Source: Trichosphaerium sp. ATCC 40318 (lineage: Eukaryota > Protista > Tubulinea). Taken from it: a stretch of 64,000 nt of DNA. Shown one piece after another: positions 19,727 through 39,921 of the stretch. Positions within the stretch are counted from its first letter, which is position 1; the number at the start of each line of letters is the position of its first letter. A program made the position numbers and the translations under genes. Below the pieces are notes generated by a model that was not told the DNA's origin, did not search any database, and saw only the letters and a list, made by a program, of their open reading frames with translations. The stretch is from contig JALMLS010000450.1 in assembly GCA_038496445.1 (NCBI GenBank), positions 186,001 through 250,000 on the forward strand, given 5' to 3'.

Positions 19727-22049
19727 ATGGGAGTTGATGTATCTAACACCAAGTGTGAATGCTTACTGCATTGGCAGATTTATTTGAAGAACTTAAGCAA
19801 GTTAGCGCATGAAGCACCCAAGAACGCAACAGCGTTGGCGTTATAATTATTGCGTGCGATCAATGCGTTTGCGAGCGGAAAACTAGTTGTTGAGGGTTTG
19901 ATCGCACAATATATAACTAGATGAGTACCGCAGTACTTAGAGAAGATGAAATAACAATAAACATCTCCTGGCAAGACCAAACCCCACAAGGCTCTCAGTT
20001 AGCACTAGATTCTACTGCAATAATATTTGATGGCGCTGGAAACGCTTTAGAGGCTGTATGACCGCTTATTCATAATTTTTTTGTTAAAATACACTTAGGT
20101 GTACTTTAATAAGCCGCAAAATACTCAAAACAGCATAAGACATAGTCGATCGTACGAGAAAGGTACGTTGTAAAAAGAATAAACGTACTCATTACAAAAC
20201 TGTCTATTTTAACGTGATTTAGACTTAGAACATACTGAATCAATTGTATTATGCCCACCGACGCTTCCCAAGAATGCCAGGGCAATAGCAATCGTGCTGA
20301 ACAATTTTGTTGGTGAAACATTTAGGTATTATTCGTCACGTGCTTTGACAATCCATTTTTCTTTTCAAAAAAACCTAAACTTTCATTCTTTAGCGTCGTT
20401 GGTGAGTGTGCTGTAACTATAGACGATGGAAAAGAATTAACTAGATTTACACATCCCTGTTGTGGGATGCACAGTGCAGTATTTATAGGTGTAGCGCTTC
20501 TGTAAGTGAAAATTCCATGTAACCTTTTGGCTCTTTTTGGATTTAAAGTTTTAACTGTTTTTTTGACGCTATAAAACTGATGTTATCAAAGGCAACCTGG
20601 CTACGGAAATTGGTCATTTCATACACGTTGGCATTTCATGCAAGGGTCAGCGTTTGATGTCCTTATTCCTGAGATATTGGTAAAACTAAAACAGGATTTA
20701 CCAAGTATTAAAGATGACGCTGTCATTTATTTTTTGAAATCTCAAGAGCTTACAAAAGTACGTTTTTATCAATGGTTTATGTTTATTACTATCCCTTCGC
20801 AAACGCCCGTTAAATTAGCATTTAATGAAGAATTTTAATAGGACGATGTTCATAAATTAGATGAACGACTTTGGCTTAGTAGTATTAATGTTTCTCTTGC
20901 GTGGTCTATGAAGAATGATATTGACTTGATAGATCTTGATGCTTCTTGCGTACTTTTCGATGGAAGGGGTAGATATATTGAAGGTGTATTTTATGGAAAG
21001 TTAAAGAATAGAAATAGCTCTATTTCTCATAATGGAGATAATATAACAACACACTCTGATGATAGTAACGAAGTAGTATGATTTTTTTTATTTGTTTTTT
21101 TTGTTGACAACCACCTTCGTTGCACTCATGCCTTTTTATAGATTCATGTTAATTTACGGTGTGTTCCTGAAGAAGTCCGAACGCTTGTATTTTGTTTAAA
21201 TTGTTATGGTCTTATTCCGTTCAAGCACGTGATGTCGTATTTTTATAGTGAATGGTTTTTAGTTAATATTTATGTTAGGGACGTTGTATCTACCATTATT
21301 CGTGTTTCAGATAGCTCTGATGGACAAGGTGATTTTACAATACGAAGGAGTTAATAATTGTTATTGATACCGTTTAGAACAAACGCGGTTTGAGTTAGAA
21401 TCTGCTGGAAAACACACAGCAATGATAATGGCAGCAGTATGTATACTTTCTATTGGAGGTATTAAATTAATACTTGTTCCCAGTTGAGCCGTAGTGGTGA
21501 TGGATGGTCATTTCTTCCTGTAGGAACTCCTGCAAAAGGTATTGTATCTATTATAACTTGATTGATGTATCTAATACAATGTAGGGAGGACTTTTCAAGA
21601 TATAATGCCTAAAATAAAATCTACAGTAAAAAGTGTATTAAAACGAGAAAAACCACCTTGGTTCGCGTTCATTTTTCGAACAAATAATGCTATCTCGTAT
21701 AACTAATTGTGGATTTAGGGACGCTGATGACTCTTCAGAAAATTGTATACTATGTTTGAAGAAATTCACAATACTTGAAAGAAGGGTACGTGCAATGAAA
21801 TGAAAGAAATGCCATTAAAAAACCGAAGAGGATTTTTTTGTTCTTTGTTTAATCAAATCCGTTGAACTCATATTTATGTAGCATCATTGCCGCGCCTGTG
21901 GTAAAATATGTTGCCAGGAATGCTCACAACAAAAGAGACCTGTATTAAAGTGGGGATATGATGCTCCAGTAAGAGTTTGTGATAAATGCTATTCAATGAA
22001 TGAGGCCTTGAAGTATGGCCAAGAAGATGACAGGAGAAAATTCGTTTAA
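19727..22049 (+). CDS. Tandem TerD-domain protein with C-terminal FYVE finger, multi-exon (start uncertain)
   Basis: TerD1: INISWQ..LDSTAIIFD..VYFNK..SIRHS; TerD2: LAWS..DLDASCVLFD..VFYGKL..ISHNGDN..IHVNL..VPEEV; FYVE: WDADDSSENCILCLKKFTILERRHHCRACGKICCQECS..VRVCDKC; stop at 22047-22049. Confidence 0.85.
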
Positions 22050-22817
22050 CAAAACAAACAAAAGAACACGAAAAAAAAATCCTTGTCAAATGGAATCATG
22101 TACAGAAAATGAATTTATTTTTAGTCAGTCTTACCAAAAAAACTTTCGAAGAAAGAAATATCAATGTTATTTTTCAGCTCTATTTACTCAACTTTCTTGC
22201 TTTTTTTTTGCGTTGGATTGCACTTTATATCTGATTTTGAAAAGGACTAACAACTGTATCTGTCTAATTTTTTTTGACACATGTCATTTGGTGACACGCA
22301 AAAATTTTTCAGTCCTGAGTAAAAGAAAAGCTCAATAGTAGTTGTCAAAAATAAAACAACGATGGAAATACTGAAAAACATCTACGGGTCGTAAGTTGGG
22401 TTTTATTAGTAGCCATTATCGGGCAAAGATAGCATAGTGGTTGTAAACGCTAGTGCTTCAGCGCTTGGAAAACTGTTTGCAAGACGAAACGTTACTAATT
22501 TTATCAGTAGCCTTGCAGCTCATTTGTTGTTTTGTCGCTGGGAACCGAACACAACGCTTGGCGTTAACGAAATAGCGCGGTATTAAGCGTTTTTGACTAA
22601 AAATTAAAGAAGGAGGCATGTTACTTGCCTGTAGAGACGTATAATACCGTTTGTAACGCAAAGGTGGTGTCATAATATTCCCGATATAGCAATCACTCAC
22701 TCTTACTCTTCCAACCTATAGTTGTGTTTATACAGCTCATATATAAACCCCGATTTTTCCCGTTAAGCTCACGTTATACTTCATTTTTCAAAATAAAAAC
22801 GCACCACGCATCCATAA

Positions 22818-25800
22818 ATGTCGTCAAAAGACGGAGAGCTGGCTGGCTGGGTTAGGTCGCAGAAACGCGTATGCTTCCGATAAACTAACAAAACAAGCAT
22901 TATTACTCACCATTACCGTTTTAGGCGTTTACTGGGTGGTGTAACACTCACCTTACAGAACATGGCATTGAAGTGAAAGATTTACAAAAAGACTTTGAAA
23001 ATGGTCTAGTGCTTATAGCACTACTGGAGGTACTAACAAACCTCCAATATCAATATAACGGTTCGATAGGAAATATCATCGCTCCCGTTTCCCAAATACA
23101 ACAAAAAACCGCGAATGCGCATGCAATACATGGAAAACATTGGAAAAGTACGGTTTTACGCGTTAGTTTGTAGAGTTGACACCATCTTTTTTGTAGGCGC
23201 TTAATTTTATAAAAGCGCAGGGTCTCCAACTTGTAAATATTGGTATGGTGCTGCACTGACGATGCAAATTCCACGTGGATGTCTGAAAACTGAGTATTAA
23301 AATTTTGTGTTAGGCCCTCAGGATGTTGTCGATGGCAACTTAAAACTGATTTTGGGTATGATTTGGTACGTTTTAATGATTTTTTGTACTCATTCTGCAT
23401 ATTCACGCTGGATAGGACCCTTATCTTAAGGTATCACATTAGTAAGGTACGTAAACGCGTTTTTAAGCTTATTCTGTAGTTTATCTTTTCATTTACCCAA
23501 AAAAGAATAAGTTTTAGAAAACTTCTCGATCTGTACTTGAGAAAGCGAGTTTTTTTCTACACTTCTCTTGATTAGATAAAACAAGTTCCTAACGTGTAGT
23601 TATAGGGAGGTAAAGACGGGAAAGCGCTTAGTAAATCCGATGTCGTTACTTGGTTAAAAGAACATCTAGACGGTTACGATGTGCCTGTCAAAGGCCTTAA
23701 ATCAGGGTATAGTCTATATACTACGCGTATAGTAGCTAAATACGTTTAGTTGGCAAGATGGTAGAGTTTTCACGGCGCTTGTCGATAGTATGCAACCGGG
23801 TATTTGTCCACTCGATGAAATGACCGGAGACCCATATAAAGATGTCGATAAGGCTATGAACAAAGCAAGGGACGAATTAGGCGTTCCGAAGATTTTAGAA
23901 CCAGAAGATATAATCGATCACCCTGATGAGCTTGCTATGATAACTTACATCTCCTACTTTCAACAAGAGCATGTGAAAGCGGAAATAAGAGAAGAAGAAG
24001 CGCTAGAGTCCGCTCCAACATCACGTACGCGCAATATTCAGTTGTTTTCCCAAATAGGATAAAGAGTTTTAAACGAAATCTTTGCTGTTGTTAGTGTTTG
24101 TTTTATACGTTTTTGAAAGCTTGAGAATATTGCTAACGTTTTATCTAGCTCCGGATGTAAAAATTACTCTTCCGAAAAAAATCGTTGCTGGTGAAGAGGC
24201 TGTTGCGTCCCTAGCTATCACTGATAGCGAAAGTGGCGAAAATGTAACTGCGGAAGATCTGGATGAAATTACAGCCGAGGTTGGTGGTAAACCGTTAAAA
24301 TTGGAGATAGCCGAAGATGGCTCAATCATTGCGAAGTTTACACCTTTGGAACCTGGTAAACAACTTCTTAAAATTAATCAAGGAGACGACACTCTGGCTA
24401 GCATGGAGTTTGACGCTCTAGCACCTCCAGGTATACGAAACCAAGAATGTTGTGTTATGTAGCTTAATGTTACCTTAGAGCCAATATGTAAGGTGTTATC
24501 AATGCCTGAAGTTATGAGAGCCGGAGAAGAAATTGTTTGTGAGCTTGCTGTTGTGGATAAGCTATCCTCAGAACCTATTCCTTTCGAGGTAGCTTCGCTT
24601 GTTTCAGATATCCCAGGCGCCGAGGCTCTTTCCTTAGAACCTGGTACTGGTGCTGAGCCAAGCGTAGTATTGAAGTTTGTACTACCAGAACCTGGTACGT
24701 TTTGTGTTTGGTGGTCAGTATATAGTTTATTAATTGTGAGGTGTAGGTGATAACCAAATCAAACTGAACCTCAACCAGGATGGAAAAGATTACCCTGTAC
24801 TAGATAAGCCTATTAGTGTGCTACCTCCAATAAGTGCGCTTTTTTAATACTGTATTTTTGGATTTTGTTGACACCTTCTCAGCATTGGAAGCCGATGTAC
24901 AAGGGGTAGATGGAAAGTTAGTTAAAGGAGAACCAGTGGCAATTGCTATTGCCTTATCTGAAAAGAATGATCAACTCGTTGATATCGATACAGATAAAAT
25001 CTCTGTACAAATACTGGGTACTGAACAAGTTATTCCTGTCACCATAGACGACAGTGGTGCTTATGTTGCCACTATTCCTATGGATGTTGAAGGTCAACAT
25101 GAACTTGTTGTCTCTTATGATGATAAACCAGTATCATCAAAAAAAATCACAGTAGACCTTCCTCTTCGTAAGTTTTAGTACAAACGTTGTGCTGTGAACG
25201 CTTACTCTTATTAAGGTGTTGAGGCTAATTTATCTGAAGTGCCTACCATGTTCTTTGCGGAGGCTGACAGCGAAATTGAAGTTAAAGTTGAAGCTTTTAA
25301 TGGAGATCTAGATAAAGATGCTATTTCTGCAGTACTGTGTGACGAGGACGGAAACGAGACACAAATTCCTGTTGTTGCTACAGACAACCCTCAAGTATTC
25401 TCAATGACTTTTGCTCCTCCAACGGCCGGTAATAACGCACTTGTCGTAAAATATAATGACGATGAGCTTGTTAAGCATGAATTTGCTGTAGAACCAAAGA
25501 AGCGCACGTCAAAGTTTTGTTGATACTTTATTGTTTTAACAACAGCTTTAGAAGTCGTAGCAAAAATTGATGTAACACCAGATGAGGCAAAGACTGGCAG
25601 CGAGTTGTTGGTTACTCTTGCTCTTGAAGAAGCTAATGGTCATCCATTTGACACTGATGGATGTCTTACTGTTGCTGTAAAAGGACCAGAAACTCCCTCT
25701 CTTGAAGTAAAGAAACAAGATGACGGCACATACACTGCTACCTTTGCAGTTAACGAACCTGGAGAGTATGAAATCGAAGCAACATACGATGATGAACCAG

Positions 25801-28800
25801 TTGGCGGTAGAACAGTTGTTATTGAACTACCTCTTCGTAAGTTTCTTAATATATTGGTAAAACCAAGCTAAATTGGATTTTTAAGGTGTTGAAGCTACTA
25901 TGCACGATGCTGATAAGCCACTCATTGAAGGTGATGATGCCGAACTTGAAGTTGGTATCCAGGCGTTTAATGGTAAAGAAGATGATAGCTTATTGTCTGC
26001 TTCTGTTCTTGACTCTGAAGGAAATGAAACCCCTTTGGATATCGTAAGAAAAGGAGATAGTATTGTTATGGCTTTTAAACCTTCTTCTCTTGGTTCAAGT
26101 ACCTTGAAGTTGCAATACGATGGTGAAGATATTTTAACCCACGAAGCAACAATTGAGCCAAAAATAAGTACGTTATTTGAACACATGTATTGTACACACT
26201 GTTGATTTTGTCATTTAGGTATTGAAGCAGCATTAACTGTACCGGATGAAATTGTAGTCGGTAAAGAGTGCCCATTGACTGTTGAGTTTACAGAAGCTAA
26301 CAATCGCGAATTTGATGTTGAACCTGAAAAACTTGAAGTTGCGCTTGTTGGTCCCACAACAACTACATTACAAGTACCTACAACTGATGCTGAAGGACCT
26401 ATATCTCTTTCATTCACACCTGAAGATGCTGGTCCATTCAAGTTAGTCGTTTCATACGATAAGGAAGAAATAGGAAGTAAAGACATCGAAATCTCCTTAC
26501 CTATGAGTACGTGCTATTGCAATTAATTGCTTGTTAAGTTCTTTTTTGCAGCTGTTGATGTTTCAGTAACCGAAGCACCTACTACTTATATGGTGGATAG
26601 CGAAGCAACTGTTGAACTTGAGGTTAAGGCGAAGAATGGCGAACTTGACGACAGTCTCTTGACAGCTTCTATTACGGATGCGGAAGGCAATACAAAACAG
26701 CTGGATGTAGTAAAGAAGGAGGGTTCTGATGACCAGTACACCATTGCACTCACTCCTGATGTTGAAGGCGATGGTGTTTTGACTGTAGCATACAATGACG
26801 AACCATTGTTGAAGCACGAGTGCTCATTTGAACCAAAGAAAGGTACACATCTTTTTTATCAACATCAACAATAATATTGACTGTATTCGTAGCCATATCT
26901 GCTGAGGTAGATGTAACACCTGACGGTGTTACTGTTGGTAAAAAAGCAAGTGTTATAGTAAAGCTATCAGAGCTTCACGAACGTCCTCTAGATAGCTCTG
27001 AGATGGCAAACATTGTTATAGAGTTGAAAGCTCCTGAAGGATCAAAAGCTAAATTAGGCAAATTGAAACAAGGAAAAGATCAGCAGTTGACAACTTCTTT
27101 TAAACCTGATGTACCTGGATCTTTCGAATTATCAGTTTCTTCTAATGGAGAAAATATTGGAGGTCGTAAAGTACAGATTGAATTACCTTTCCGTACGTGA
27201 CATGCTTTTTTTTCTTTCCGTCAATGTTTGTCAACTTATAATTTCGTAGGAGTTGAGGTTGATTTATGCGAAGCACCAACAGTTTTGTTCGCTGGCAATG
27301 AGACCACATGGGAAATTGAAGTCAAGGCATTCAATGGAGAATGTGATCCTTCATTGCTGAAGGCTACAATAGTTAACCCTGATGGTACAACTAACGAGCC
27401 TAAAGTAATAAAGAATGATGACTCAGAAGAACAATATTCTATCACATTCACACCAACTGTTATTGGTGCTTCTCAAGTATCTATTGAATATGAAGGAAAC
27501 CCAGAATTAGAATTTGTTTGCATGGTAGAACCTAAGAAAGGTACTGTCGAACGAAGAAAAGCATCTCAATGCTGTTGTTAACTTTTATCTTTAGAAATTG
27601 TGGCAAAGGTTGATATTACTCCAGACAATGTAGTTGTTGGTGATACTGCCAATGTATCTGTTGCTTTAACAGAAGCCAATGATCGCAGTATCGAACCTGA
27701 TGTTCAAAAACTCAGTGTTACTGTTACTGCACCTGAAGGCTCTCAAGTACCACTTCTTTGTGCAGTTGAACAGCAAGAAGACGGTACATTCACAGTATCA
27801 TTCAAACCGGAAGAGAACGGTACATATGAAGTCAGTGTGTCCTATGACGATGACAAGATCGGTGGACGAACATTGCAAGTTGAGTTGCCTTTCCGTACGC
27901 TTGCTTAAGTTTTGTTCTGTTGTTATACTAACAAATACGTACAGGTATTACTGCAGAGGTTGTTGAAGCACCTACCATGGTATTTACCGAATGTGAGACT
28001 TCTGTTGAGGTTAAGGTCGAAGCTTTTAATGGTGTCTGCGACGAAGCGCTACTATCAGCGAAGATTGAAGATCCTGAAGGAAATACGCAAAAAATTCCTA
28101 TTACAAAGAACGAGGATCAAGAACAGCAATACGCTGTTACTTTTACTCCTTCGGCAGTTGGAGAAAATGTCGTCACTGTACTATACAATGGAGAACCTAT
28201 AATGACGCATAAGTGCGCAGTTGAGCCAAAGAAAGGTACTATTCTTCTTTTGAAAGTTCGCTTCCTTACTTACCTTTTACCAGAAATTTCGGCTTCTATT
28301 GACATCACACCTGATGATGTTGTCACTGGAGATACTGCTTGTATCAAGGTGACTCTAAAAGAGAACAAAGGGCTTCCATTCGAGCCAGAGGTAGAGAAGC
28401 TTCGCGTTTCTCTCTCAACTCAACCGGAAGGTGCTGATTGCACTTTGAGCGATATTGACGCCAAAGAAGATGGCTCTTTTGAAGTGACTTTCGCGCCTGA
28501 ACTCGCTGGTCCATATGAGATAAGTGTTGCCTATGATAGCGAAAAAGTAGGTGGCAGAGAAATAGAAGTAGCCTTGCCTATCCGTACGTGAATATCTTTG
28601 TTTTGTAGTATTTCTAAGGTTCTCACAATGTGTTGCAGAGTTGACAGCTGAAGTCTCAGTATCTCCAGATACGATTGTTGTAGGTGAAGATGCAACTGTT
28701 GACGTTACGGTAAAAGAAGTTTACGAGCGCCCACTTGCTTCTACAGAGCTCGATAAAGTAACTATCGCAGTGAACGGTCCTGAAGGGTCTGCAGCTGAGA

Positions 28801-31800
28801 TTCAAGATGTTAAAAACGAAGGAGATGCTTTCAAAGCTGTATTTACACCTGACTTACCTGGTGATTTCAAGGTAATAGTATCCTTTGGTGATGACAAGGT
28901 CGGCGAAAGCACTGTTAGTGTCGAGCTGCCATTACGTAAGTAGTAAACCTGTTTACGCTATTTTAACTTTCTTAGGTGTGGAAGCTACCTTTTGTGAAGC
29001 ACCAACTGTACTATTTGCAGAATGTCCAACAACTCTTGAAGTAAAGGTAAAAGCATTTAACGGTGACTGTGATACCGCTCTACTGTCAGCAAGCGTTGCT
29101 GATCCAGAAGGCAATGTGTCAACACTACCAATCACCAAGAATGACGATAAAGAAGATCAATTTACAATTGAATTTACTCCTTCATCTGTTGGTGACAACA
29201 AAGTATCTGTAAAATACGGTGACGATCCAGTTCTTGAACAATCATTCAATGTTGAACCAAAGAAAGGTACGTTTACATTACTTTTGTACATTCTTCTTCG
29301 TTTACTTACAAATACGATTAGAAGTTGTCGCTTCACTTGATGTTACACCAGATAATGTTGTTGTCGGTGATGACACTCATGTTAAAATATCATTGAACGA
29401 ATCAAGCGGTCGTGATATTGACATTGATTCTGATAAATTGGTTGTAACATTGAAACATCCAGATGGTACCACAACAACACTTGAACCTCGTCAACAAGAA
29501 GATGGATCATTTGATGCATCTTTCTCACCTGACAGTGATGGTGATTATGATATTGACGTATCTTACGATGATGAGAAAGTCGGAGGAAGATCAGTTCAAG
29601 TTGACAAACCACTCAGTATGCTTACGCCCTTATAATTTTATTACACTATTTTCATGCTTACAAGTCATAGAATTGGAAGTTTCTCTCATTGAAGTTCCAA
29701 CTGTCTTATTTGTTGATGCACCAACAACTCTTGAAGTTGACGTTAAAGCCACTAATGGAGATTGCGATGCTACGCTATTAACAGCAACGATTGCTGATCC
29801 AGAAGGCAACGTTCAACAGGTTCCAGTTGAGAAAAACAATGAAAAAGAAGGCGATCAATTTACCCTTACCTTCACGCCTTCTCTCCCTGGAGACTCGAAA
29901 CTCACGCTCCAATATGCCAAGAAGCCAGTGTTGGAGCATACATGCACTGCAGAGCACAAGAAAGGTAATATAGAATATAATTTACGCTGAGATCTGATTC
30001 GATTAGAAATGGTTGCACAAATCGATATTACCCCAGATCACTTGATGATCAATGAAGATGCAACAATCTCTCTTACTATTTCAGAAGCAAATGGTCGCGA
30101 TATTGAACCTCAAGCTGAAAAATTGAGTGTTGTTCTTCGCAGTCCAGATGGTGCTGAAAACAAAACTGATCCATTGACTGCTCAAGATGATGGTACATTC
30201 AGTGTTGTGTTTGTACCAAAGGTCAATGGTACATACGATGTTGTCGCATTCTATGATGATGATAAAGTTGGAGGAAGAACTGTTGAAGTACACCGCCCTC
30301 TAAGTACGTACTGTAGAAAGTTTAACTACAGTTTGTATTTACTTTTAACCCAGAATTGGAAGCTCATGTTTGCGAATCACCAACTGTATTCTTTGTTGAC
30401 ACACCAACAAGTGTCGAGATTGAAATCAAGGCTTTCAATGGAAATTGTGATGATACCCTTCTATCAGCGGTCCTCAAAGACTCTGAAGGCAATGTACAAG
30501 TACTTTCAGTAGCTAGGAACCCCCCAGAAGAGAGTGGAGATGAGGAACCTACTGACAAAGATACACAATATACAATCGCTTTTACTCCTTCTTCTTTGGG
30601 AGACAATACTGTATCTGTAGTCTACAATGGTGGAAGTCCTCTATTACAGCACGTTTGCAGTGTCGAGCCACAAAAAGGTACTGAAAGCCAAAGATTTATT
30701 TTCTAATTTCGTACTTATGAACTATTCAGAAATCACTGCTAAGGTTGATATCACACCTGATGATGTGGTTGTTGGCGATAAAACTACTGTGACAGTCGTT
30801 CTATCAGAAACTGGCGGTCGCGATATCTCTCCTGACCTTGATAAACTCAAAGTTGTTCTCGCCAGCCAACCAACAACTTCATCATGTCAAATCGATGATA
30901 CAACACAACAAGAAGATGGATCATTCACCACAACATTCACACCTGACGTTGATGGTGACTATGATGTATCAGTATCTTATGACGGTGATAAGATTGGAGG
31001 TAGAGCTGTAAATGTAGATCCACCATTCCGTACGTTACTTTTACTTATCTGTAATGTCAAACTAATATGTCTAAAAGGATTGGAGGTATCTCTTGCCGAA
31101 GCACCAACAGTACTATTTGCAGAATGTCCAACAACTCTTGAAGTTGAAGCAAAAGCATTTAATGGTGACTGTGATGCCGCACTACTGTCAGCAAGCGTTG
31201 CTGATCCAGAAGGCAATGTATCAACACTACCAATCACCAAGAATGATAAAGAAGATCAATTTACAATTGAATTTACTCCATCATGTGTTGGTGACAACAA
31301 AGTATCTGTAAAATACGGTGACGATCCAGTTCTTGAACAATCATTCAATGTTGAACCAAAGAAAGGTACGTTTACATTACTTTTGTACATGCTTCTTTGT
31401 TTACTTACAAATACGATTAGAAGTTGTCGCTTCACTTGATGTTACACCAGATAATGTTGTTGTCGGTGATGACACTCATGTTAAAATATCATTGAACGAA
31501 TCAAGTGGTCGTGATATTGACATTGATTCTGATAAACTTGTTGTAACATTGAAACATCCAGATGGTACCACAACAACACTTGAACCTCGTCAACAAGAAG
31601 ATGGATCATTTGATGCATCTTTCTCACCTGATAGTGATGGTGATTATGATATTGATGTGTCTTACGATGATGAGAAAATCGGAGGAAGATCAGTTCAAGT
31701 TGACAAACCACTCAGTACGCTTACACTCTTATAACAATCTTATTATTTTGTTCTAAGTAATTTGTTAGGATTGGAAGTTTCTCTCATTGAAGTTCCAACT

Positions 31801-34800
31801 GTCTTATTTGTTGATGCACCAACAACTCTTGAAGTTGATGTTCAATCCTTTAATGGCACTTGCAACCAGTCGCTGCTGACAGCATCTGTTGCAGACCCAG
31901 AAGGCAATGTTGAACAGATCCCAATTGACAAGAACACGTACAAGGACAAAGGAGATCAATTTACAATCACTTTCACTCCGTCTGTCCCTGGAGACTCCAA
32001 AGTATCCGTGAGCTATGATGGTGAACCTGTTCTAGAACATACTTGCTCTGTTGAAGAGAAAAAAGGTGCTTTACAACTATACTATTTACTTTCATTTACA
32101 TTCTATTAGACCTTATGGCACAAATCGATATTACCCCAGATCACTTGATGATTAACGAGGATGCAAAGATTTCTCTCACACTTTCAGAAGCAAATGGTCG
32201 CGATATTGAACCTCAAGCTGAAAAATTGAGTATTGTTCTTCGCAGTCCAGATGGTGCTGAAAACAAAACTGATCCATTGACAGCTCAAGATGATGGTACA
32301 TTCAGTGTTGTGTTTGTACCAAAGGTCAATGGTACATATGATGTTGTTGCATTCTATGACGATGATAAAGTTGGAGGAAGAACTGTTGAAGTACACCGCC
32401 CTCTCAGTACGTATTGTGTAAAGTGTAACTGCAGTTGTACTTACATCTATTTAAGGATTGGAAGTGGAAGTGTGCGAATCACCAACTGTATTCTTTGTTG
32501 ACACACCAACAAGTGTTGAGATTGAAATCAAGGCTTTGAATGGAAATTGTGATGATACTCTTCTATCAGCGACAGTTACAGATGCTGAGGGAAATAGTAC
32601 ACCACTTACAATCTCCAAAAATTCAGAAAATGAAGATCAATATACAATCCCTTTTACTCCTTCTTCTTTGGGAGACAATATTGTTTCTGTAGTATACGGT
32701 AATGAGAGTCCATTATTACAACACGTTTGCAGTGTCGAGCCACAAAAAGGTACAGGGCATGCTATCATTGACTTAGAAACTTACATCCATTAGAAATCAC
32801 TGCTAAGGTTGACATCACACCTGATGATGTGGTTGTTGGCGATAAAACTACTGTGACAGTCATTCTATCAGAAACTGGTGGTCGTGATATCTCTCCTGAC
32901 CTTGATAAACTCAAAGTTGTTCTCGCCAGCCAACCAACAACTTCATCATGTCAAATCAATGATACAACACAACAAGAAGATGGATCATTCACCACAACAT
33001 TCACACCTGACGTTGACGGTGACTATGATGTATCAGTATCTTATGACGGTGATAAGATTGGAGGTAGAGTTGTAAATGTAGATCAACCATTCCGTACGTT
33101 ACACTTTTACAATACCTTTACACGTTCGCTAATATTCCAAAGGATTGGAGGTATCTCTTGTTGAAACACCAACAGTGTTATTTGCAGAATGTCCAACAAC
33201 TCTTGAAGTTGAAGCAAAGGCGTTTAATGGTGACTGTGATGCCTCACTACTATCAGCAAGCGTTGCTGATCCAGAAGGCAATGTATCAACACTACCAATC
33301 ACAAAGAATGATGATAAAGAAGATCAATACACCATCGAGTTTACTCCATCATGTGTTGGTGACAACAAAGTATCTGTAAAATACGGTGATGATCCAGTTC
33401 TCGAACAGTCATTCAGTGTTGAACCAAAGAAAGGTGCGTTTACATTACTTTTGTTCACTCTTCATTCGTTTACTTACAAATACGATTAGAAGTTGTCGCT
33501 TCACTTGATGTTACACCAGATAATGTTGTTGTCGGTGATGACACTCATGTCAAAATATTATTGAACGAATCAAGCGGTCGTGATATTGACATTGATTCTG
33601 ATAAATTGGTTGTCACCATTGTAAACCCTGATGGAACAAAAACACCTGTAGAGCCAGTCAAACTTGCTGATGGCTCTTATGATGTCGCTTTCTCACCAGA
33701 AGACAATGGCAACTACAAGATTGACGTATCTTACGATGATGAGAAAGTCGGAGGACGATCAGTTCAAGTTGATACACCACTCAGTACGCTTACAGCTCTT
33801 GTAATTTTATTATTGTAGTTGAATTCTAAGTTTTCTTTTTAGGATTGGAAGTTTCTCTTGTTGAAGTTCCAACTGTATTATATGTTGACATACCTACAAC
33901 TCTTGAAGTTGGAGTTGTGGCTTTCGATGGCGAATGCAATACTTCGTTATTGACAGCATCTATTGCAGACCCAGAAGGCAATGTCGAACAGATTCCAATT
34001 GACAAGAACACGTACAAGGACAAAGGAGATCAATTTACAATCACTTTCACTCCAACAACTCACGGAGACTCCAAAGTATCTGTGAACTATGATGGTGAAC
34101 CTGTTCTAGAACATACTTGCTCTGTTGAGCCTCAAAAAGGTACCTACAGCTGTAATGTTGTTTCAATATGCTGACGTTGTCCTAGACATTGTTGCTCAAG
34201 TCGACATTACACCAGATAGCATTGTCATGGGTCAAAAAGCAACAGTGAGCATTTCGCTTATTGAAGCAAATGGTCATTCAGTAGATTCTGAGTTACCTAA
34301 AATATCAATCACCTTGGACTCTCCTGATGGATCCAAAGCGACAATAGCAGATTTAACCAGCATGCCGGATGGATCCTTTACTACGTCGTTCTTGGCTGAT
34401 GTTGAAGGTCCATTTACCGTCACTGTGAAGCATGATGACTCTAAGGTCGGCGGTAGATCTGTAGTCGTTGACTTGCCACTTCGTACGCTTTTCAACCTTT
34501 CAAGTCTTTGTACTAAGTATTACTAGGGCTTGATGTTCAACTTCGGGATACGCCTGAAGAGTTTCCAGCCGATAAGCTTACAACTCTTGCATTTGATGTT
34601 AATACAATCAAAGGCGTTATTGACCCATCTTGTCTAACAGCTTCTGTTGCTGGTTCTGATGGCGTGTTAGAGTCTATACCTGTTGATCAGATTAGCGATA
34701 ACCAATTCGCTGTTACTTTTAAACCAGCCTCTCTAGGAGATAATATTGTAACTCTAGTTTATGATGGAGAGCCAGTGTTGCAACATAGTTGCAATATTGA

Positions 34801-37800
34801 AGAACCAAAAGGTGCGTAAAAAATTATATGATTTGTGGATAGAATTTTGTTTGTTTTATTATTTTTGTTCTTGTTTGGTAGTCTAACTGTTGTATTTAGT
34901 TATTAAAGCATCTGTTGATATCACACCGGATGATGTTGTAACCAACAAACCCACAACTGTAAATATTACCCTCAAAGAAGCCAGTAACCGTCCATTCAAC
35001 AATGACGTTTCAAAACTATCAGTTTCACTTGCTAGTATTCCTCCTGGTTCCAAGTGTTCCATTGGAGACGTTAAACAAGAAAAAGACGGTAGTTTTACCA
35101 CGTCATTCACACCAGACGTCCCAGGCACTTTTGACTTGTCCATTACATACAATGATGAAAAAGTTGGCGGCACAAAACTTGTTGCTGAAACTCCATTGAG
35201 TACATTTTGGTCCCATCACCGTTTTCTAATGTGATGTTTCAAGGACTCGACATACAACTGTGCGAAGTACCTACTGCGGTTTATGCCCAGTCTGTAACTT
35301 CGCTAGAAGTACAAATAAAGGCTTTTAATGGCAGCTGTGATGATTCTCTGTTGAGCGCTTGTTTCGTTGATGCTGATGGCAATACACAACCTGCCTCTAT
35401 TATCAAGAATGATGAGTCTCAAGAACAGTATACTATCTCATTTACACCAGAATCACCTGGTAAAGTGTCTGTATCTGTTCTTTATGATGATTCACCTGTT
35501 TTAAACCATGAGTGTAGTGTAGAACCTAAAAAAGGTAAGGAGGGGTTTTTTTTTGTGTTTTAGATTTTACGATATTCTAACTAAACTGGTTTCCTACAGA
35601 AATTATTGCAAATGTGGATATTAGACCTGATGACATTAATGTTGGTACACCAGCAGTTGTTTCAATTGACCTTGTAGAAGCAGCAGGTCGAGAAATCGAA
35701 CCTGATATGTCTAAATTGAACGTCGTATTGGTTGAACCTGATGGCTCTTGTACACCTTTAACTAATGTTGAAGTAAATCCAGATGGTACTATAACGCTTG
35801 GATTTGTTCCAAAGACAGAAGGATCGTTCGACGTTGATGTTGTGTATGACAACGAGAAAGTGGGTGGCAGAAAAGTTGATGTTTCTCTTCCTTTCCGTGC
35901 GTTTTTAGCTAAAAAATCAAGACCTTGTTTGCTTAACTTTTGATTCATAGGAGTTGATGCTCAAGTCACTCTTCCTGATGATATTCTCGAAGGTGAGAAA
36001 TCAACTATTGTCTTCAAAGTCAAGGGTGTCAATGGTGAAATGGACATTTCAAAAATTAAAGGTACCCTTGTAAAGGGTAACATTGATGATTACTCCGGAA
36101 ACCATGATGACTTGTCACCTGCTGAAGTATCACATAATGGAAACGATACTGTGTTTGTTGATATTAGGCCTACAAAAGTTGGAGACCATGCTGTTGCGTT
36201 ATCATATGACGACAAGGAACAAATTTGTCAAGTTCCAATAAGTGTCTCTCCTGATGTTGGTATGTTCTTTCTTGATATTTTATTCGAAATTGTTCAGTTA
36301 CTAATACACATACAGCACCTCATGCTACCATTGGAGAACCAGAAATATATGTGGAAAGCAGTTCTGATAAATTGAGTGTACCTGTAAGCGTAGTAGACGC
36401 TATCTCAGGTCAACCTGTATCAGATGTTTCCAACTTAAAAGCGTCAATAATCGATGCTGATGGCAATAAGTCGGAAGCTTCATTAGAACAAGTTAAGCCT
36501 GGTGAATTCCGAGCTGTTGGTTCTCCTCAAGGAAATCCTCCTTATGATGTTTGCATTGAATACAAGGACAAGGAGATAGCGCGCAAAGAGCTTGACCTTA
36601 ACAAACGTACTTAACCACACTATACAGTTCTAATCTTTTTACAGCTGCTGTAATTGTTATTGGTGAACATGATGTTGCTGTAGCTGGTGACCCAGTTTCT
36701 TTATCTGTGTCTGTTCAAGATGACACCGGAAAAGCTGTAGATCCAGATGTTATGCGTCTAAAGGCATATGTTGTTAATGAGAACACTGGTGACACTGTAC
36801 CAGTTGAGGTAAAGAAAGAAGACGGTAAGGTACTTGTATCATTTGTACCAACGTCTGCTGGAAAATTCCCTGTCGTTGTGACATGTGATAACGTCACAGC
36901 GAAGCAGGATGTTGCCGTATTTGACAGTAAAGATAAAGGTACTCATCACAAACAACTCGTTTTGATCTTTTTGGCTAACCTTTGCTTCAAATAGAACCGA
37001 AACCTAATAAGAAGTATTACTTTGATATTGATATTGGCAATAGAGCACAGAATGATGTAAAGGTATTACTACTTTGTTAGAAATTTCGTGATGTTTACCT
37101 CTCTTTGTGCTAACTTGTAGTTTTTTAGGTTGAGTTGTTCACTCCTAGTAGTCAAAGATTGAAATGTGAACTTGTACCAACAAGCTCAACTACTATAAGA
37201 TGTACCTATACACCTGAAGATGATGGAGACCATAATGTATCTATTGTATATAATGAAGAACTTCTGACAGATAAACCACTATCGCTTCAAGTGGCAGGCA
37301 AGTTTCAAACAACCAACAAGAACTATTTTTTGTTAAATGTCGGCTTAGGTGATGAGGACAGTACTGATGATACTGGTATGGTGAAGATGCCAGCAAGTAC
37401 TGTTTGTATACCTTCAGAATATAGTGATATAGATATCAAGGGCGATGAAGTTATCGAGTTAAAAGAAGACTACAAAGCAGAGAACAAAGGTTCGCTATTG
37501 TTTTTTTTTTAGTTCAACTTGTTAAATGTTGTTTTACAGATGACCTTGCTCCACTATGGTCTTATATCATACCTTACTTGATTCTTGTCGCTATGACAGT
37601 AATTACATCTACGTGGTTGGCCAGTGTGTACTTTAAGCATAAACCAACATGTGGTAACCTTGATACTTTCATGGTAAGATACTTGTATTTTTCTCATTAA
37701 GATTTTAACTAACACGCTTTTTGTAGATTATTGCTTCCATTGTACAACTTATTGATGTGGGTCTGTTGGGTGGTGTGTTATTTAAAGTAATTAGACCACG

Positions 37801-38263
37801 ACATAAAGCTAAAGTGTATAAAAGAAATCCAACACCGCTCACCAAAGCTGATTTGTACGTCAACCTTTGGGGTTTTTTTGCATTTTGATTTTGTGCTAAC
37901 GCTCTTCAAAGGGCTATAAGCGGTTCCTGGATAGTTGGCACTCTTGGTTATATCGCTTGGTTCATAGTTGGTAATGCGTGGTTCTGGCAAGTGAGTAAAG
38001 CAGCGTGTGTTACGCCTGTGTATAACTCTATGCTTGGTACGTTATTGTGATTTTTTTTCTGGGGTTTTTTCTAAATTATCTTGTTAGTCTATGTTATCGC
38101 TATGTACTTGGTAATGGCTCTTTCTGGAACTCTTATTGCTGTGTTTATTCTACGAAGAGTATTTAAGGAACCAACGCCTTATGTGACAGATAGAACTTTA
38201 TCTACAATTGAGTTTGAAAGAGAGATTGACGTTCCATACGCTGATCAAACAAATGACTTGTAA
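22818..38263 (+). CDS. Giant filamin-like protein: tandem CH actin-binding domain + ~38 Ig/filamin-like repeats + C-terminal 4-TM domain (~4,200 aa estimated)
   Basis: CH1 WVRSQKRAFTGWCNTHL..FENGLVLIALLE..VDGNLKLILGMIWTLILRY; CH2 SWQDGRVF..GVPKILEPED..PDELAMITYISYF; ~97-aa repeats mostly one per phase-1 exon; acidic linker spliced in frame to four hydrophobic helices; stop at 38263. Confidence 0.85.
28975..34139 (+). repeat. Higher-order internal tandem duplication: ~2.1-kb unit of six Ig-repeat exons, ~2.5 copies
   Basis: Near-identical exons recur at ~28975/31078/33143 (PTVLFAECPTT), ~29322/31421/33489 (EVVASLDVTPDNVVVGDDTH), ~30007/32110 and ~30730/32794. Confidence 0.9.
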
Positions 38264-39216
38264 TTTATGAAATAAAATAAAAACCGAGTATTGTACAAAA
38301 ACAGAAGGCAATGGTATTTAAACTATCTTGAACTATATAGCACAGATAGAGCGTGTTCTAAAGTATTCAAATTAACTACCAATCTCACGCAGAGGCACAA
38401 ACTTAATTAAGTAAGTACGTGCGTACAAGATCCATCTGGCGAAGCAAAAAGCTCACTGAGTAATAAATCTTTGTTGGTGAGGCGATTTCTCCTTTTGTTT
38501 TTTTGTTTAGTAGCTACTTGTCCATACCCTGCCGGATAAAAAGGGGTATGGGTACTGCTTTTGGCTGTGGTTGAACACGATCATGCGATCGTCATCATAA
38601 CTCAATTGTGGATATTCCTACCAGTTTTGGATACTTTGGATTTCAGTAACTACGACATTATGATATTCTTGACTTTTTGGTACAACAGCGGCTACGTTTA
38701 AGAACGTAGAAAATGAAAGCCCACAAGTTGTCCCTAAACAAAATGTAGGTTAGAATTCTCCTTTGAAATGTGTACCCAAATCCCGAAGTTAGTAGACGTC
38801 ATTTACAAGCGCCTTTGATGTGCTATTTACCTCGTTAAAAGACCAAAAAAGGTTTTTTCGGTAACGCGGCTTTAAAATGTCTCTAAAGAATTCTAACGTG
38901 TTTTGTTTCCTTTCATGCTGTTGCACGTTGTATTAATAACGTACACAACAGCCCTAACGTTCTAGAAACTGATTTCTTTTTTAAACTGTAGTACAGTTTC
39001 TAAAACAAGGTATTCAATTATATAGCGGGTGGAGTAGGTATTTGACTAAAATAAACAGAGTTTGAGTCAAAAAACGAGAATTATTGTTTTTCTTATTTTC
39101 TCAACTATCTCCTATGCGAAATCGACGCTAGGCATAGACACTGTACAATATGTACAAGCATATGGTAGAGTTTAAGCTTATTTCTCGTCAAAGACATTTT
39201 GCCTAATGTAGAAAAC

Positions 39217-39254
39217 AGAAAAACGCTCGCAAACAAGCTTGCGAGCGTTTTTCT
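39217..39254. repeat. Perfect 16-bp inverted repeat with 6-nt loop
   Basis: agaaaaacgctcgcaa-acaagc-ttgcgagcgtttttct. Confidence 0.9.
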
Positions 39255-39492
39255 TGGCGTTCTCCGAGAATCGTATTAAAAAGGAGGTGTTTCTCCTAAA
39301 ATTACTCTGAAGTCATTATTTCTGTAAACCATGCATACGGTTACATTGATAATGATACTGTTTATAACTATAGATACTTTAAAGCTCGTTTTCAAAAAAT
39401 GAAATGAGAGAAAACACTTCAAAAAAGGCAAGAGCTCGAAATTTGGATGCTTTTTTGACCTAATTTAGAAACCTACTTACAGTTCAAGAGAT

Positions 39493-39921
39493 ATGCAGCT
39501 TCAGCAGTTCAACTTTGATGTTTTACAACCATTGGGATCTAATGGAAAGAATAAAGGTTCTCACAAACCGAGGCAAAAAAGAGAAAAGATGCCGCCTTTG
39601 TATACTGTACATAAATTAGAGTGCAGCGACGGCGTTACTGTTTCTCTTACAATACAAGGAGTATATAGTAATCTAGACTTCGTTTCACCATCTACCGATA
39701 CAAATGATGATATGGGATATGATACTATCCGAGCTAAACCAGCTACACATTTCGTACCAGTACAGAATATAACATTTAAGAAACAAAATAATAGCACAAT
39801 CGCAAAGAAGACAAAATTACGCGTTTTGCGTCGACCTTTGGTGACGAGACTTTCTCCACCTCTTCCCGGGAACCGTAGCTATCTAGAACAAATATCTTAC
39901 GTGCTATCCGGTAGGCGGTGA
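39493..39921 (+). CDS. Hypothetical protein (142 aa, basic, no recognised domain)
   Basis: ATG-initiated uninterrupted ORF in otherwise non-coding DNA; no motif recognised. Confidence 0.35.
   Translation: MQLQQFNFDVLQPLGSNGKNKGSHKPRQKREKMPPLYTVHKLECSDGVTVSLTIQGVYSNLDFVSPSTDTNDDMGYDTIRAKPATHFVPVQNITFKKQNNSTIAKKTKLRVLRRPLVTRLSPPLPGNRSYLEQISYVLSGRR

What the first reader, a model, noticed from the sequence alone, without database searches (positions are those of the whole stretch)
22818..38263. Giant filamin-like protein with its own C-terminal 4-TM membrane anchor
Seen: a filamin-type CH1-CH2 domain and ~38 acidic Ig-like repeats continue in frame, via plausible splice sites (one GC donor), into four hydrophobic helices with a Cys in each predicted outer loop (KPTCGNLD; WFIVGNAWFW..AACVTPVY), a TMEM272-like pattern. 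Known: Dictyostelium filamin has 6 repeats and vertebrate filamin 24, and both are soluble dimers. Inference: an integral-membrane actin tether with a very long spacer, functionally like nesprin/interaptin but built from filamin repeats.
Basis: partly seen in the sequence, partly recalled or inferred. Interest (0 to 1): 0.8.

Follow-up and report, generated by a model that had tools for sequence, protein, structure and literature searches.

The report
Giant filamin with four-helix membrane anchor
One long gene appears to encode a 450 kDa actin-binding filamin whose tail runs straight into four membrane-spanning helices, so it would tie actin directly to a membrane; no described filamin does this, but no RNA evidence could be obtained.

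Summary
My model has 53 exons on the + strand (22818-38263) and encodes 4195 aa. It has a complete filamin-type CH1-CH2 actin-binding head, 38 acidic filamin-type Ig repeats, a 46-aa acidic linker and a 186-aa tail. Nearly every repeat is one phase-1 exon, with introns of 38-66 nt. The tail holds the only four membrane-grade hydrophobic segments of the protein. Its only two cysteines lie in the two predicted outer loops.

The link to the membrane exons is strong at DNA level:
- No in-frame stop separates the last repeat from helix 1.
- The junction intron (37490-37539) is typical in size and splice-site score.
- No AATAAA occurs before 38271, 8 nt after the stop.

The protein is absent from a 1.84-billion-protein library. 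None of the 150 best filamin-repeat relatives has a multi-helix anchor or resembles the membrane exons. Four of the five paper searches looked for such a filamin and found none. Searched exon by exon, the membrane module matches nothing, so "TMEM272-like" stays untested.

The scan has already noted a similar gene on another piece of this genome (s1-393432). I could not check that note.

Verdict: a new variant of a known kind, a probable membrane-integral filamin.

The parts
22818..24024 (+). Exons 1-8: start ATG 22818, with an in-frame TAA directly upstream. CH1 is exons 1-6 (22818-23446) and CH2 is exons 7-8 (23606-24024). This is the filamin-type actin-binding head. It has no signal peptide.
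   Evidence: Pfam CH hits; PDB filamin-B/A; 42% identity to the FLNC head over residues 6-231; sequence reading
24149..37297 (+). Exons 9-48: 38 acidic filamin-type Ig repeats. Almost all are one repeat per phase-1 exon. Two sequence types alternate (LEVSL..EAPTVLF and IVAKVDITPD).
   Evidence: PF00630 in 31/38; internal profile finds the rest; fold of unit 1; exon table
28976..34482 (+). Amplified six-repeat superunit of about 2.1 kb: exons 24-29, 30-35 and 36-39. Several exon pairs are far better kept than the introns that follow them.
   Evidence: Repeat identities up to 98% aa; exon 25 vs 31 is 97.6% nt while the following intron is 61.7%
37298..37348 (+). 51-nt candidate GC-AG intron. It is in frame and has no stop, so splicing is optional for the reading frame.
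   Evidence: its codon score of -0.23 lies between the intron and exon ranges
37349..37489 (+). Exon 49: acidic 46-aa linker. It holds an internal in-frame ATG at 37378 (MVKMPAS...) that could start a 224-aa anchor-only product.
37490..37539 (+). Junction intron of 50 nt (GTTCGC...TTTTACAG). If it is retained, the frame stops at 37510-37512 after GSLLFFF, giving a soluble form.
   Evidence: Donor 6.7 and acceptor 7.5 bits, against rod means of 8.6 and 5.2; ORF table
37540..37673 (+). Exon 50: helix 1 (PLWSYIIPYLILVAMTVIT...) and outer loop 1 with a Cys (KHKPTCGNLDTFM).
37727..37854 (+). Exon 51: helix 2, which contains an Asp, and the basic inner loop (7 K/R in 22 aa).
37912..38036 (+). Exon 52: Trp-rich helix 3 (WIVGTLGYIAWFIVGNAWFW) and outer loop 2 with a Cys (QVSKAACVTPVYNSM).
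38088..38263 (+). Exon 53: helix 4, a 35-aa acidic cytosolic tail and the TAA stop (38261-38263).
38271..38276 (+). First AATAAA after position 36900, 8 nt after the stop. There is none between the rod and the membrane exons.

Best explanation
This is one gene for a 4195-aa (453 kDa, pI 4.2) membrane-integral filamin.

Shown: the CH1-CH2 head is of the filamin type. The rod is 38 filamin-type Ig domains with roughly 400 net negative charges. The open reading frame runs on, through ordinary short introns, into a bundle of four hydrophobic helices.

Inferred: both ends face the cytosol. The basic loop between helices 2 and 3 and the tail lie inside, and the two short Cys-bearing loops lie outside or in a lumen, where the two Cys may form a disulfide. 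The head binds F-actin, and the rod acts as a long, extensible, polyanionic spacer. From about 3.3 nm per Ig in vertebrate filamin, its length would be roughly 125-150 nm. The four-helix module fixes the protein covalently in a membrane. One polypeptide would thus do the job that soluble filamin does by binding the tails of integrins or GPIb-alpha.

Which membrane it sits in is unknown. Retention of the 50-nt junction intron would give a soluble form, so the anchored and soluble forms could be regulated.
For: - Head and rod identity.
- Frame continuity from the last repeat to helix 1, with no stop. The only stop nearby needs retention of intron 49.
- Introns 48-52 are 50-57 nt, and their splice scores fall within the range of the 38 rod introns.
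- The flanking gene-free spacers are about 0.7 and 1.2 kb. The membrane exons lie only 50 nt beyond the linker exon.
- There is no AATAAA before 38271.
- The four hydrophobic helices are the only ones in the protein apart from the CH1 core helix.
- Charge is 7 K/R in the inner loop against 2 and 1 in the outer loops.
Against:
- No orthologue or transcript-derived protein was found to confirm the junction.
- The internal ATG at 37378 could give a separate anchor-only product.
- The donor of the junction intron (GTTCGC) differs from the usual GTACGT.
- The function is inferred from domain identity alone.
Confidence: 0.75

Rival explanations
1. There are two products from one locus. A soluble giant filamin ends at the stop at 37510 through retention of intron 49, or through early polyadenylation. 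A small 224-aa four-helix membrane protein is made from an internal promoter and the ATG at 37378. The fused protein is rare or absent.
For: There is an in-frame ATG at 37378 in exon 49, and a stop 7 codons into the unspliced intron 49. The junction donor GTTCGC departs from the usual GTACGT, although its score of 6.7 bits is within the rod range. Nesprins are known to make short isoforms from internal promoters (PMC3981789, abstract seen).
Against: The two reading frames would overlap in the same frame by more than 130 nt. There is no AATAAA between the rod and 38271. The spacing is that of an intron, not of the 0.7-1.2 kb spacers around the gene. Even if such isoforms exist, they would not exclude the fused form.
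Confidence: 0.18
2. The rod is extracellular, as in GEX2/FUS1-type receptors built of filamin-like Ig domains, and the helices are a conventional receptor anchor.
For: Six repeats also hit Pfam Ig_GEX2_N. Library protein P0096 has a hydrophobic segment at its start and another at residue 3259, far from its C-terminus. That fits an extracellular filamin-repeat protein, but I did not check it.
Against: The N-terminus is hydrophilic with no signal peptide. It is a complete cytosolic actin-binding domain. The charge distribution puts the N-terminal side of helix 1 inside.
Confidence: 0.03
3. The join is an assembly or gene-model artefact: two unrelated genes brought together, or repeat copy number distorted by collapse or expansion of near-identical 2.1-kb units.
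For: The units are up to 98% identical at protein level, so the repeat count of 38 could be off by a multiple of six.
Against: The last eight repeats (31-38), the linker and the membrane exons are not part of the amplified block, whose copies share 63-98% aa identity. Among the eight, the best match to any other repeat is 23-27% for repeats 35-38 and 43-53% for repeats 31-34. The junction therefore does not lie in near-identical repeated sequence. Frame, intron phase and splice signals all fit across it.
Confidence: 0.04

Closest known systems
Filamins (vertebrate FLNA/B/C, Dictyostelium ddFLN/ABP-120, C. elegans FLN-1/2)
   Same: Both have an N-terminal CH1-CH2 actin-binding domain of the filamin type. 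The best PDB hits are filamin-B and filamin-A, and the head is 42% identical to Branchiostoma FLNC. Both have a rod of PF00630 Ig repeats.
   Different: It has 38 repeats, against 6 in Dictyostelium and 24 in vertebrates (established knowledge). The rod is strongly acidic, and two repeat types alternate strictly. The C-terminus is a four-helix membrane module, not a free dimerising repeat. None of the 150 best library relatives has such a tail.
Nesprin-1/2 and ANC-1 (giant KASH proteins)
   Same: The design is shared: CH-CH head, very long rod, C-terminal membrane anchor.
   Different: The rod is made of filamin Ig domains, not spectrin repeats. It has four helices with both ends cytosolic, not one helix followed by a luminal KASH peptide. 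The C-terminus reads ...ADQTNDL.
Interaptin (Dictyostelium abpD) and calmin
   Same: A CH-CH head and a C-terminal membrane anchor in one polypeptide (own knowledge, not tested here).
   Different: Those proteins have a coiled-coil or short linker and a single C-terminal helix. This one has 38 Ig domains and four helices.
GEX2/FUS1-type gamete receptors
   Same: Filamin-like Ig domains joined to a membrane anchor. Pfam Ig_GEX2_N hits six repeats.
   Different: Those proteins are extracellular, with a signal peptide and no CH domains. Here the rod is cytosolic.

Membership tests
Filamin | N-terminal tandem CH1-CH2 actin-binding domain | tested here: met
   Pfam CH on the exons. PDB best hits are filamin-B/A. 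42% identity over residues 6-231 to the FLNC head.
Filamin | Rod of filamin/ABP280 Ig repeats (PF00630) | tested here: met
   31/38 repeat exons hit PF00630. Six of the other seven match an internal profile at E 4e-7 or better and unit 2 only at E 0.0013. The unit 1 model matches filamin domains.
Filamin | Dimerisation through the last Ig repeat | not testable with these tools
   The last unit is split over exons 47-48 and is divergent (24% to its best sister). No complex prediction is possible by reference.
Filamin | Soluble protein without membrane-spanning segments, as in all characterised filamins | tested here: not met
   Four hydrophobic helices in the last 186 aa.
KASH proteins (nesprins) | Single C-terminal helix followed by a short luminal KASH peptide ending in PPPX | tested here: not met
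   Four helices, a predicted cytosolic C-tail of 35 aa ending ADQTNDL.
KASH proteins (nesprins) | Spectrin-repeat rod | tested here: not met
   The rod exons hit Filamin and other Ig-like families only.
TMEM272-like four-helix proteins | Sequence or profile similarity of the four-helix module to TMEM272 | not testable with these tools
The joined 186-aa tail has no reference and was not searched. The single exons hit no Pfam family and nothing in the Atlas.
GEX2-type extracellular filamin-repeat receptors | Signal peptide and extracellular rod | tested here: not met
   Hydrophilic N-terminus MSSKDGELAGWVRSQKR followed by CH domains.

The most novel reading that the evidence does not exclude
The fused protein is real. 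It founds an undescribed class, membrane-integral filamins, in which an orphan four-helix bundle with a loop-to-loop Cys pair and polar residues inside its helices (Asp in helix 2, Asn in helix 3) is pulled directly by actin through a rod of about 130 nm. The class would be a small family in this amoeba. The bundle might be more than an anchor, for example a force-sensing membrane module.
Probability: 0.6. Interest if true: 0.7.

Novelty: new variant of a known kind. Interest (0 to 1): 0.6.

Why it matters
Filamins are the textbook soluble actin cross-linkers. They reach membranes only by binding the tails of receptors. A filamin that is itself an integral membrane protein would be a new, adaptor-free way to couple cortical actin to a membrane. 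It would be built on the same logic as nesprins, from different parts.

It would also give a simple system for asking three questions: how rod length sets the distance between membrane and cortex, how force travels along Ig rods, and what the orphan four-helix module does.

The uniform phase-1 exons and the recently amplified six-repeat unit also show how such giant rods grow.

Tried and rejected
- **Joined protein:** the spliced protein and the joined 186-aa tail were never sent to any search, fold or family tool. They were used only in local scripts, for hydropathy, repeat comparison and alignment of the head to proteins already fetched.
- **Word search:** the 127-aa ORF with the last half-repeat and linker gave nothing. 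That search sees only proteins of 70-222 aa.
- **Big library search:** the query was a two-repeat ORF. The gene's own product is not in the library, and the best hits are 24-38% identical.
- **Membrane exons:** Pfam gave nothing above noise. The Atlas look-alikes scored 0.79 and 0.87, which is lead level only.
- **Metagenome scans:** the first found nothing. The second gave L001, which I read as a bacterial chemotaxis-receptor-like contig and reject as spurious.
- **Viral scans:** one found nothing. The other gave L002, where the match lies antisense to a long ORF, so I reject it as spurious.
- **Scan's own notes by sequence:** nothing.
- **Single C-terminal hydrophobic stretches in P0060, P0090 and P0100:** these look like doubtful ends of gene models, not anchors.
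- **Gene modelling:** my first automatic parse over-split the non-repeat exons. I corrected it by hand.

Full report
**What is there**

Three-frame translation of 22000-39500 shows a long series of + strand open blocks of about 95-100 aa. I built a gene model by dynamic programming and corrected it by hand. It has 53 exons, from the ATG at 22818 to the TAA at 38261-38263, and encodes 4195 aa (453 kDa, pI 4.24). An in-frame TAA lies directly before the ATG.

Introns are 38-159 nt, and most are 44-57 nt. Their donors are usually GTACGT, and many carry a CTAAC-like branch motif. Two introns are GC-AG, with donors at 25504 and 37298.

**Head**

Exons 1-8 encode CH1-CH2. Both halves hit Pfam CH. 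The CH2 exon finds filamin-B and filamin-A actin-binding domains as its best solved relatives, ahead of spectrin, alpha-actinin and plectin. The spliced head was used only in a local script. It aligns at 42% identity over residues 6-231 with Branchiostoma FLNC, and at about 36-40% with amoebozoan transcriptome proteins from Luapelamoeba and Pyxidicula. The N-terminus is hydrophilic and has no signal peptide.

**Rod**

Exons 9-48 encode 38 repeat units. 36 of them are single exons, and exons 9-47 all start in phase 1 (the last unit's second exon, 48, starts in phase 0).
- Scanned one by one by reference, 31 of 38 hit PF00630 Filamin.
- A profile of units 4-34 finds six of the other seven at E 4e-7 or better and unit 2 only at E 0.0013.
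- Unit 1 has no Pfam hit. Folded with the 38-row alignment, it gives a seven-strand sandwich (pLDDT 87.6). Of its 16 PDB matches at E <= 0.001, 10 are filamin domains, from Lin-41, FLNB 10 and 13, FLNA 10 and 21, FLNC 14-15 and TRIM3. The rest are ICAM-1 and S-layer Ig domains.
- The rod is very acidic: 18.7% D+E against 7.8% K+R, pI 4.2.
- Two sequence types alternate.
- A six-repeat unit of about 2.1 kb has been amplified about 2.7 times (exons 24-29, 30-35, 36-39). Several exon pairs are much better kept than the introns after them. For example, exons 25 and 31 are 97.6% identical against 61.7% for the following intron. This fits the exon model and selection or conversion acting on coding sequence.

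**Tail**

After the last repeat (exon 48, ending ...LSLQVA) come, in order:
- a 51-nt stretch that is either a GC-AG intron or coding, since it is in frame with no stop;
- exon 49, an acidic linker of 46 aa;
- a 50-nt GT-AG intron;
- four exons, each holding one hydrophobic helix.

On the Wimley-White octanol scale the four 19-residue windows score -11.6, -3.8, -10.4 and -9.7 kcal/mol. The best window in the other 3990 residues is -4.5, the buried helix of CH1.

The loop between helices 2 and 3 has 7 K/R in 22 residues. The two short loops have 2 and 1. This fits a topology with the rod, the middle loop and the C-tail all in the cytosol. The module has exactly two Cys, one in each predicted outer loop.

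**One gene or two?**

The DNA argues for one gene:
- There is no in-frame stop between the rod and helix 1. The only stop nearby (37510) is read only if the junction intron is retained.
- The junction intron is of typical length. Its donor scores 6.7 bits and its acceptor 7.5 bits, against rod means of 8.6 and 5.2. Random GT and AG sites average -3.4 and 0.0.
- The membrane exons lie 50 nt from the linker exon. The gene-free spacers on either side of the gene are about 0.7 and 1.2 kb.
- No AATAAA occurs between 36900 and 38271, and that one lies 8 nt after the stop.

A separate anchor gene would have to start at the in-frame ATG at 37378, inside the filamin reading frame. That amounts to an internal-promoter isoform of the same gene. 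I cannot exclude it, nor a soluble isoform made by intron retention.

**Relatives**

I searched a two-repeat ORF against 1.84 billion cluster representatives and got 228 hits, but not the protein itself. The best hits are 24-38% identical, so neither this genome nor a close relative is in the library.
- Of the 150 best hits, about 60 have a CH head.
- None has a cluster of hydrophobic helices at its C-terminus.
- None shows any tblastn similarity to the membrane exons.

The membrane exons, searched one at a time by reference, hit no Pfam family and nothing useful in the Atlas. They found no real locus in metagenome or viral contigs. L001 and L002 are chance matches.

The joined tail and the joined protein were not searched, because the rule is exon by exon by reference. 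'TMEM272-like' is therefore untested. The TMEM272 papers listed are cancer and livestock genetics studies by title and abstract, and I read none of them.

Four paper searches on filamin with a membrane anchor found nothing of the kind.

**Earlier notes of this scan**

These AI notes are untested here. They call the organism an amoeba. They also record a second giant gene on another piece of the same genome, with a CH head, about 42 filamin domains and a four-helix anchor (s1-393432). If that note holds, the architecture is a small family, which would be good evidence that the fusion is real.

**Reading**

The best explanation is a membrane-integral filamin. The actin-binding head sits at one end and an orphan four-helix bundle at the other, joined by an acidic rod of roughly 125-150 nm. 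That length is inferred from about 3.3 nm per Ig in vertebrate filamin.

It works like nesprin, interaptin or calmin in design, but it is not a KASH protein. By head and rod it belongs with the filamins, and it departs from them by being membrane-embedded.

My confidence that the fused protein is made is about 0.75. The function, and which membrane it sits in, are inferred.

Noticed in passing
window 24149-36938: All 38 rod exons from exon 9 to exon 46 begin and end in phase 1. Two repeat types alternate strictly, with one extra unit of the second type at exons 22-23. This suggests a two-domain structural unit and growth by exon duplication.
   Followed up: partly
window 25504-25551 and 37298-37348: Two GC-AG introns in one gene. 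The first has no GT alternative that keeps the frame. The second is in frame without a stop, so it could be an optional 17-aa insert.
   Followed up: partly
window 21640-22050 (+): The upstream neighbour ends with what looks like a FYVE-type zinc finger (RVRAMKHHCRACGKICCQECS...VRVCDKCY). I named it by eye from the motif. About 0.7 kb of non-coding DNA separates it from the filamin start.
   Followed up: no
window 38264-39460: About 1.2 kb without a convincing open frame on either strand lies between the filamin stop and the next + strand ORF at 39469.
   Followed up: no
L001:1518-1664 and L002:913-1023: The only collection matches to the membrane exons are chance hits. By eye from its ORFs, L001 is a high-GC bacterial chemotaxis-receptor-like contig. 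In L002 the match lies antisense to a 416-aa ORF of a viral contig.
   Followed up: yes
P0001, P0003, P0005, P0016 (library proteins): Filamin-repeat proteins of 5900-7850 aa exist unnamed in public assemblies. P0001, P0005 and P0016 have CH heads; P0003 showed no CH hit. A rod of 38 repeats is therefore not the record.
   Followed up: partly
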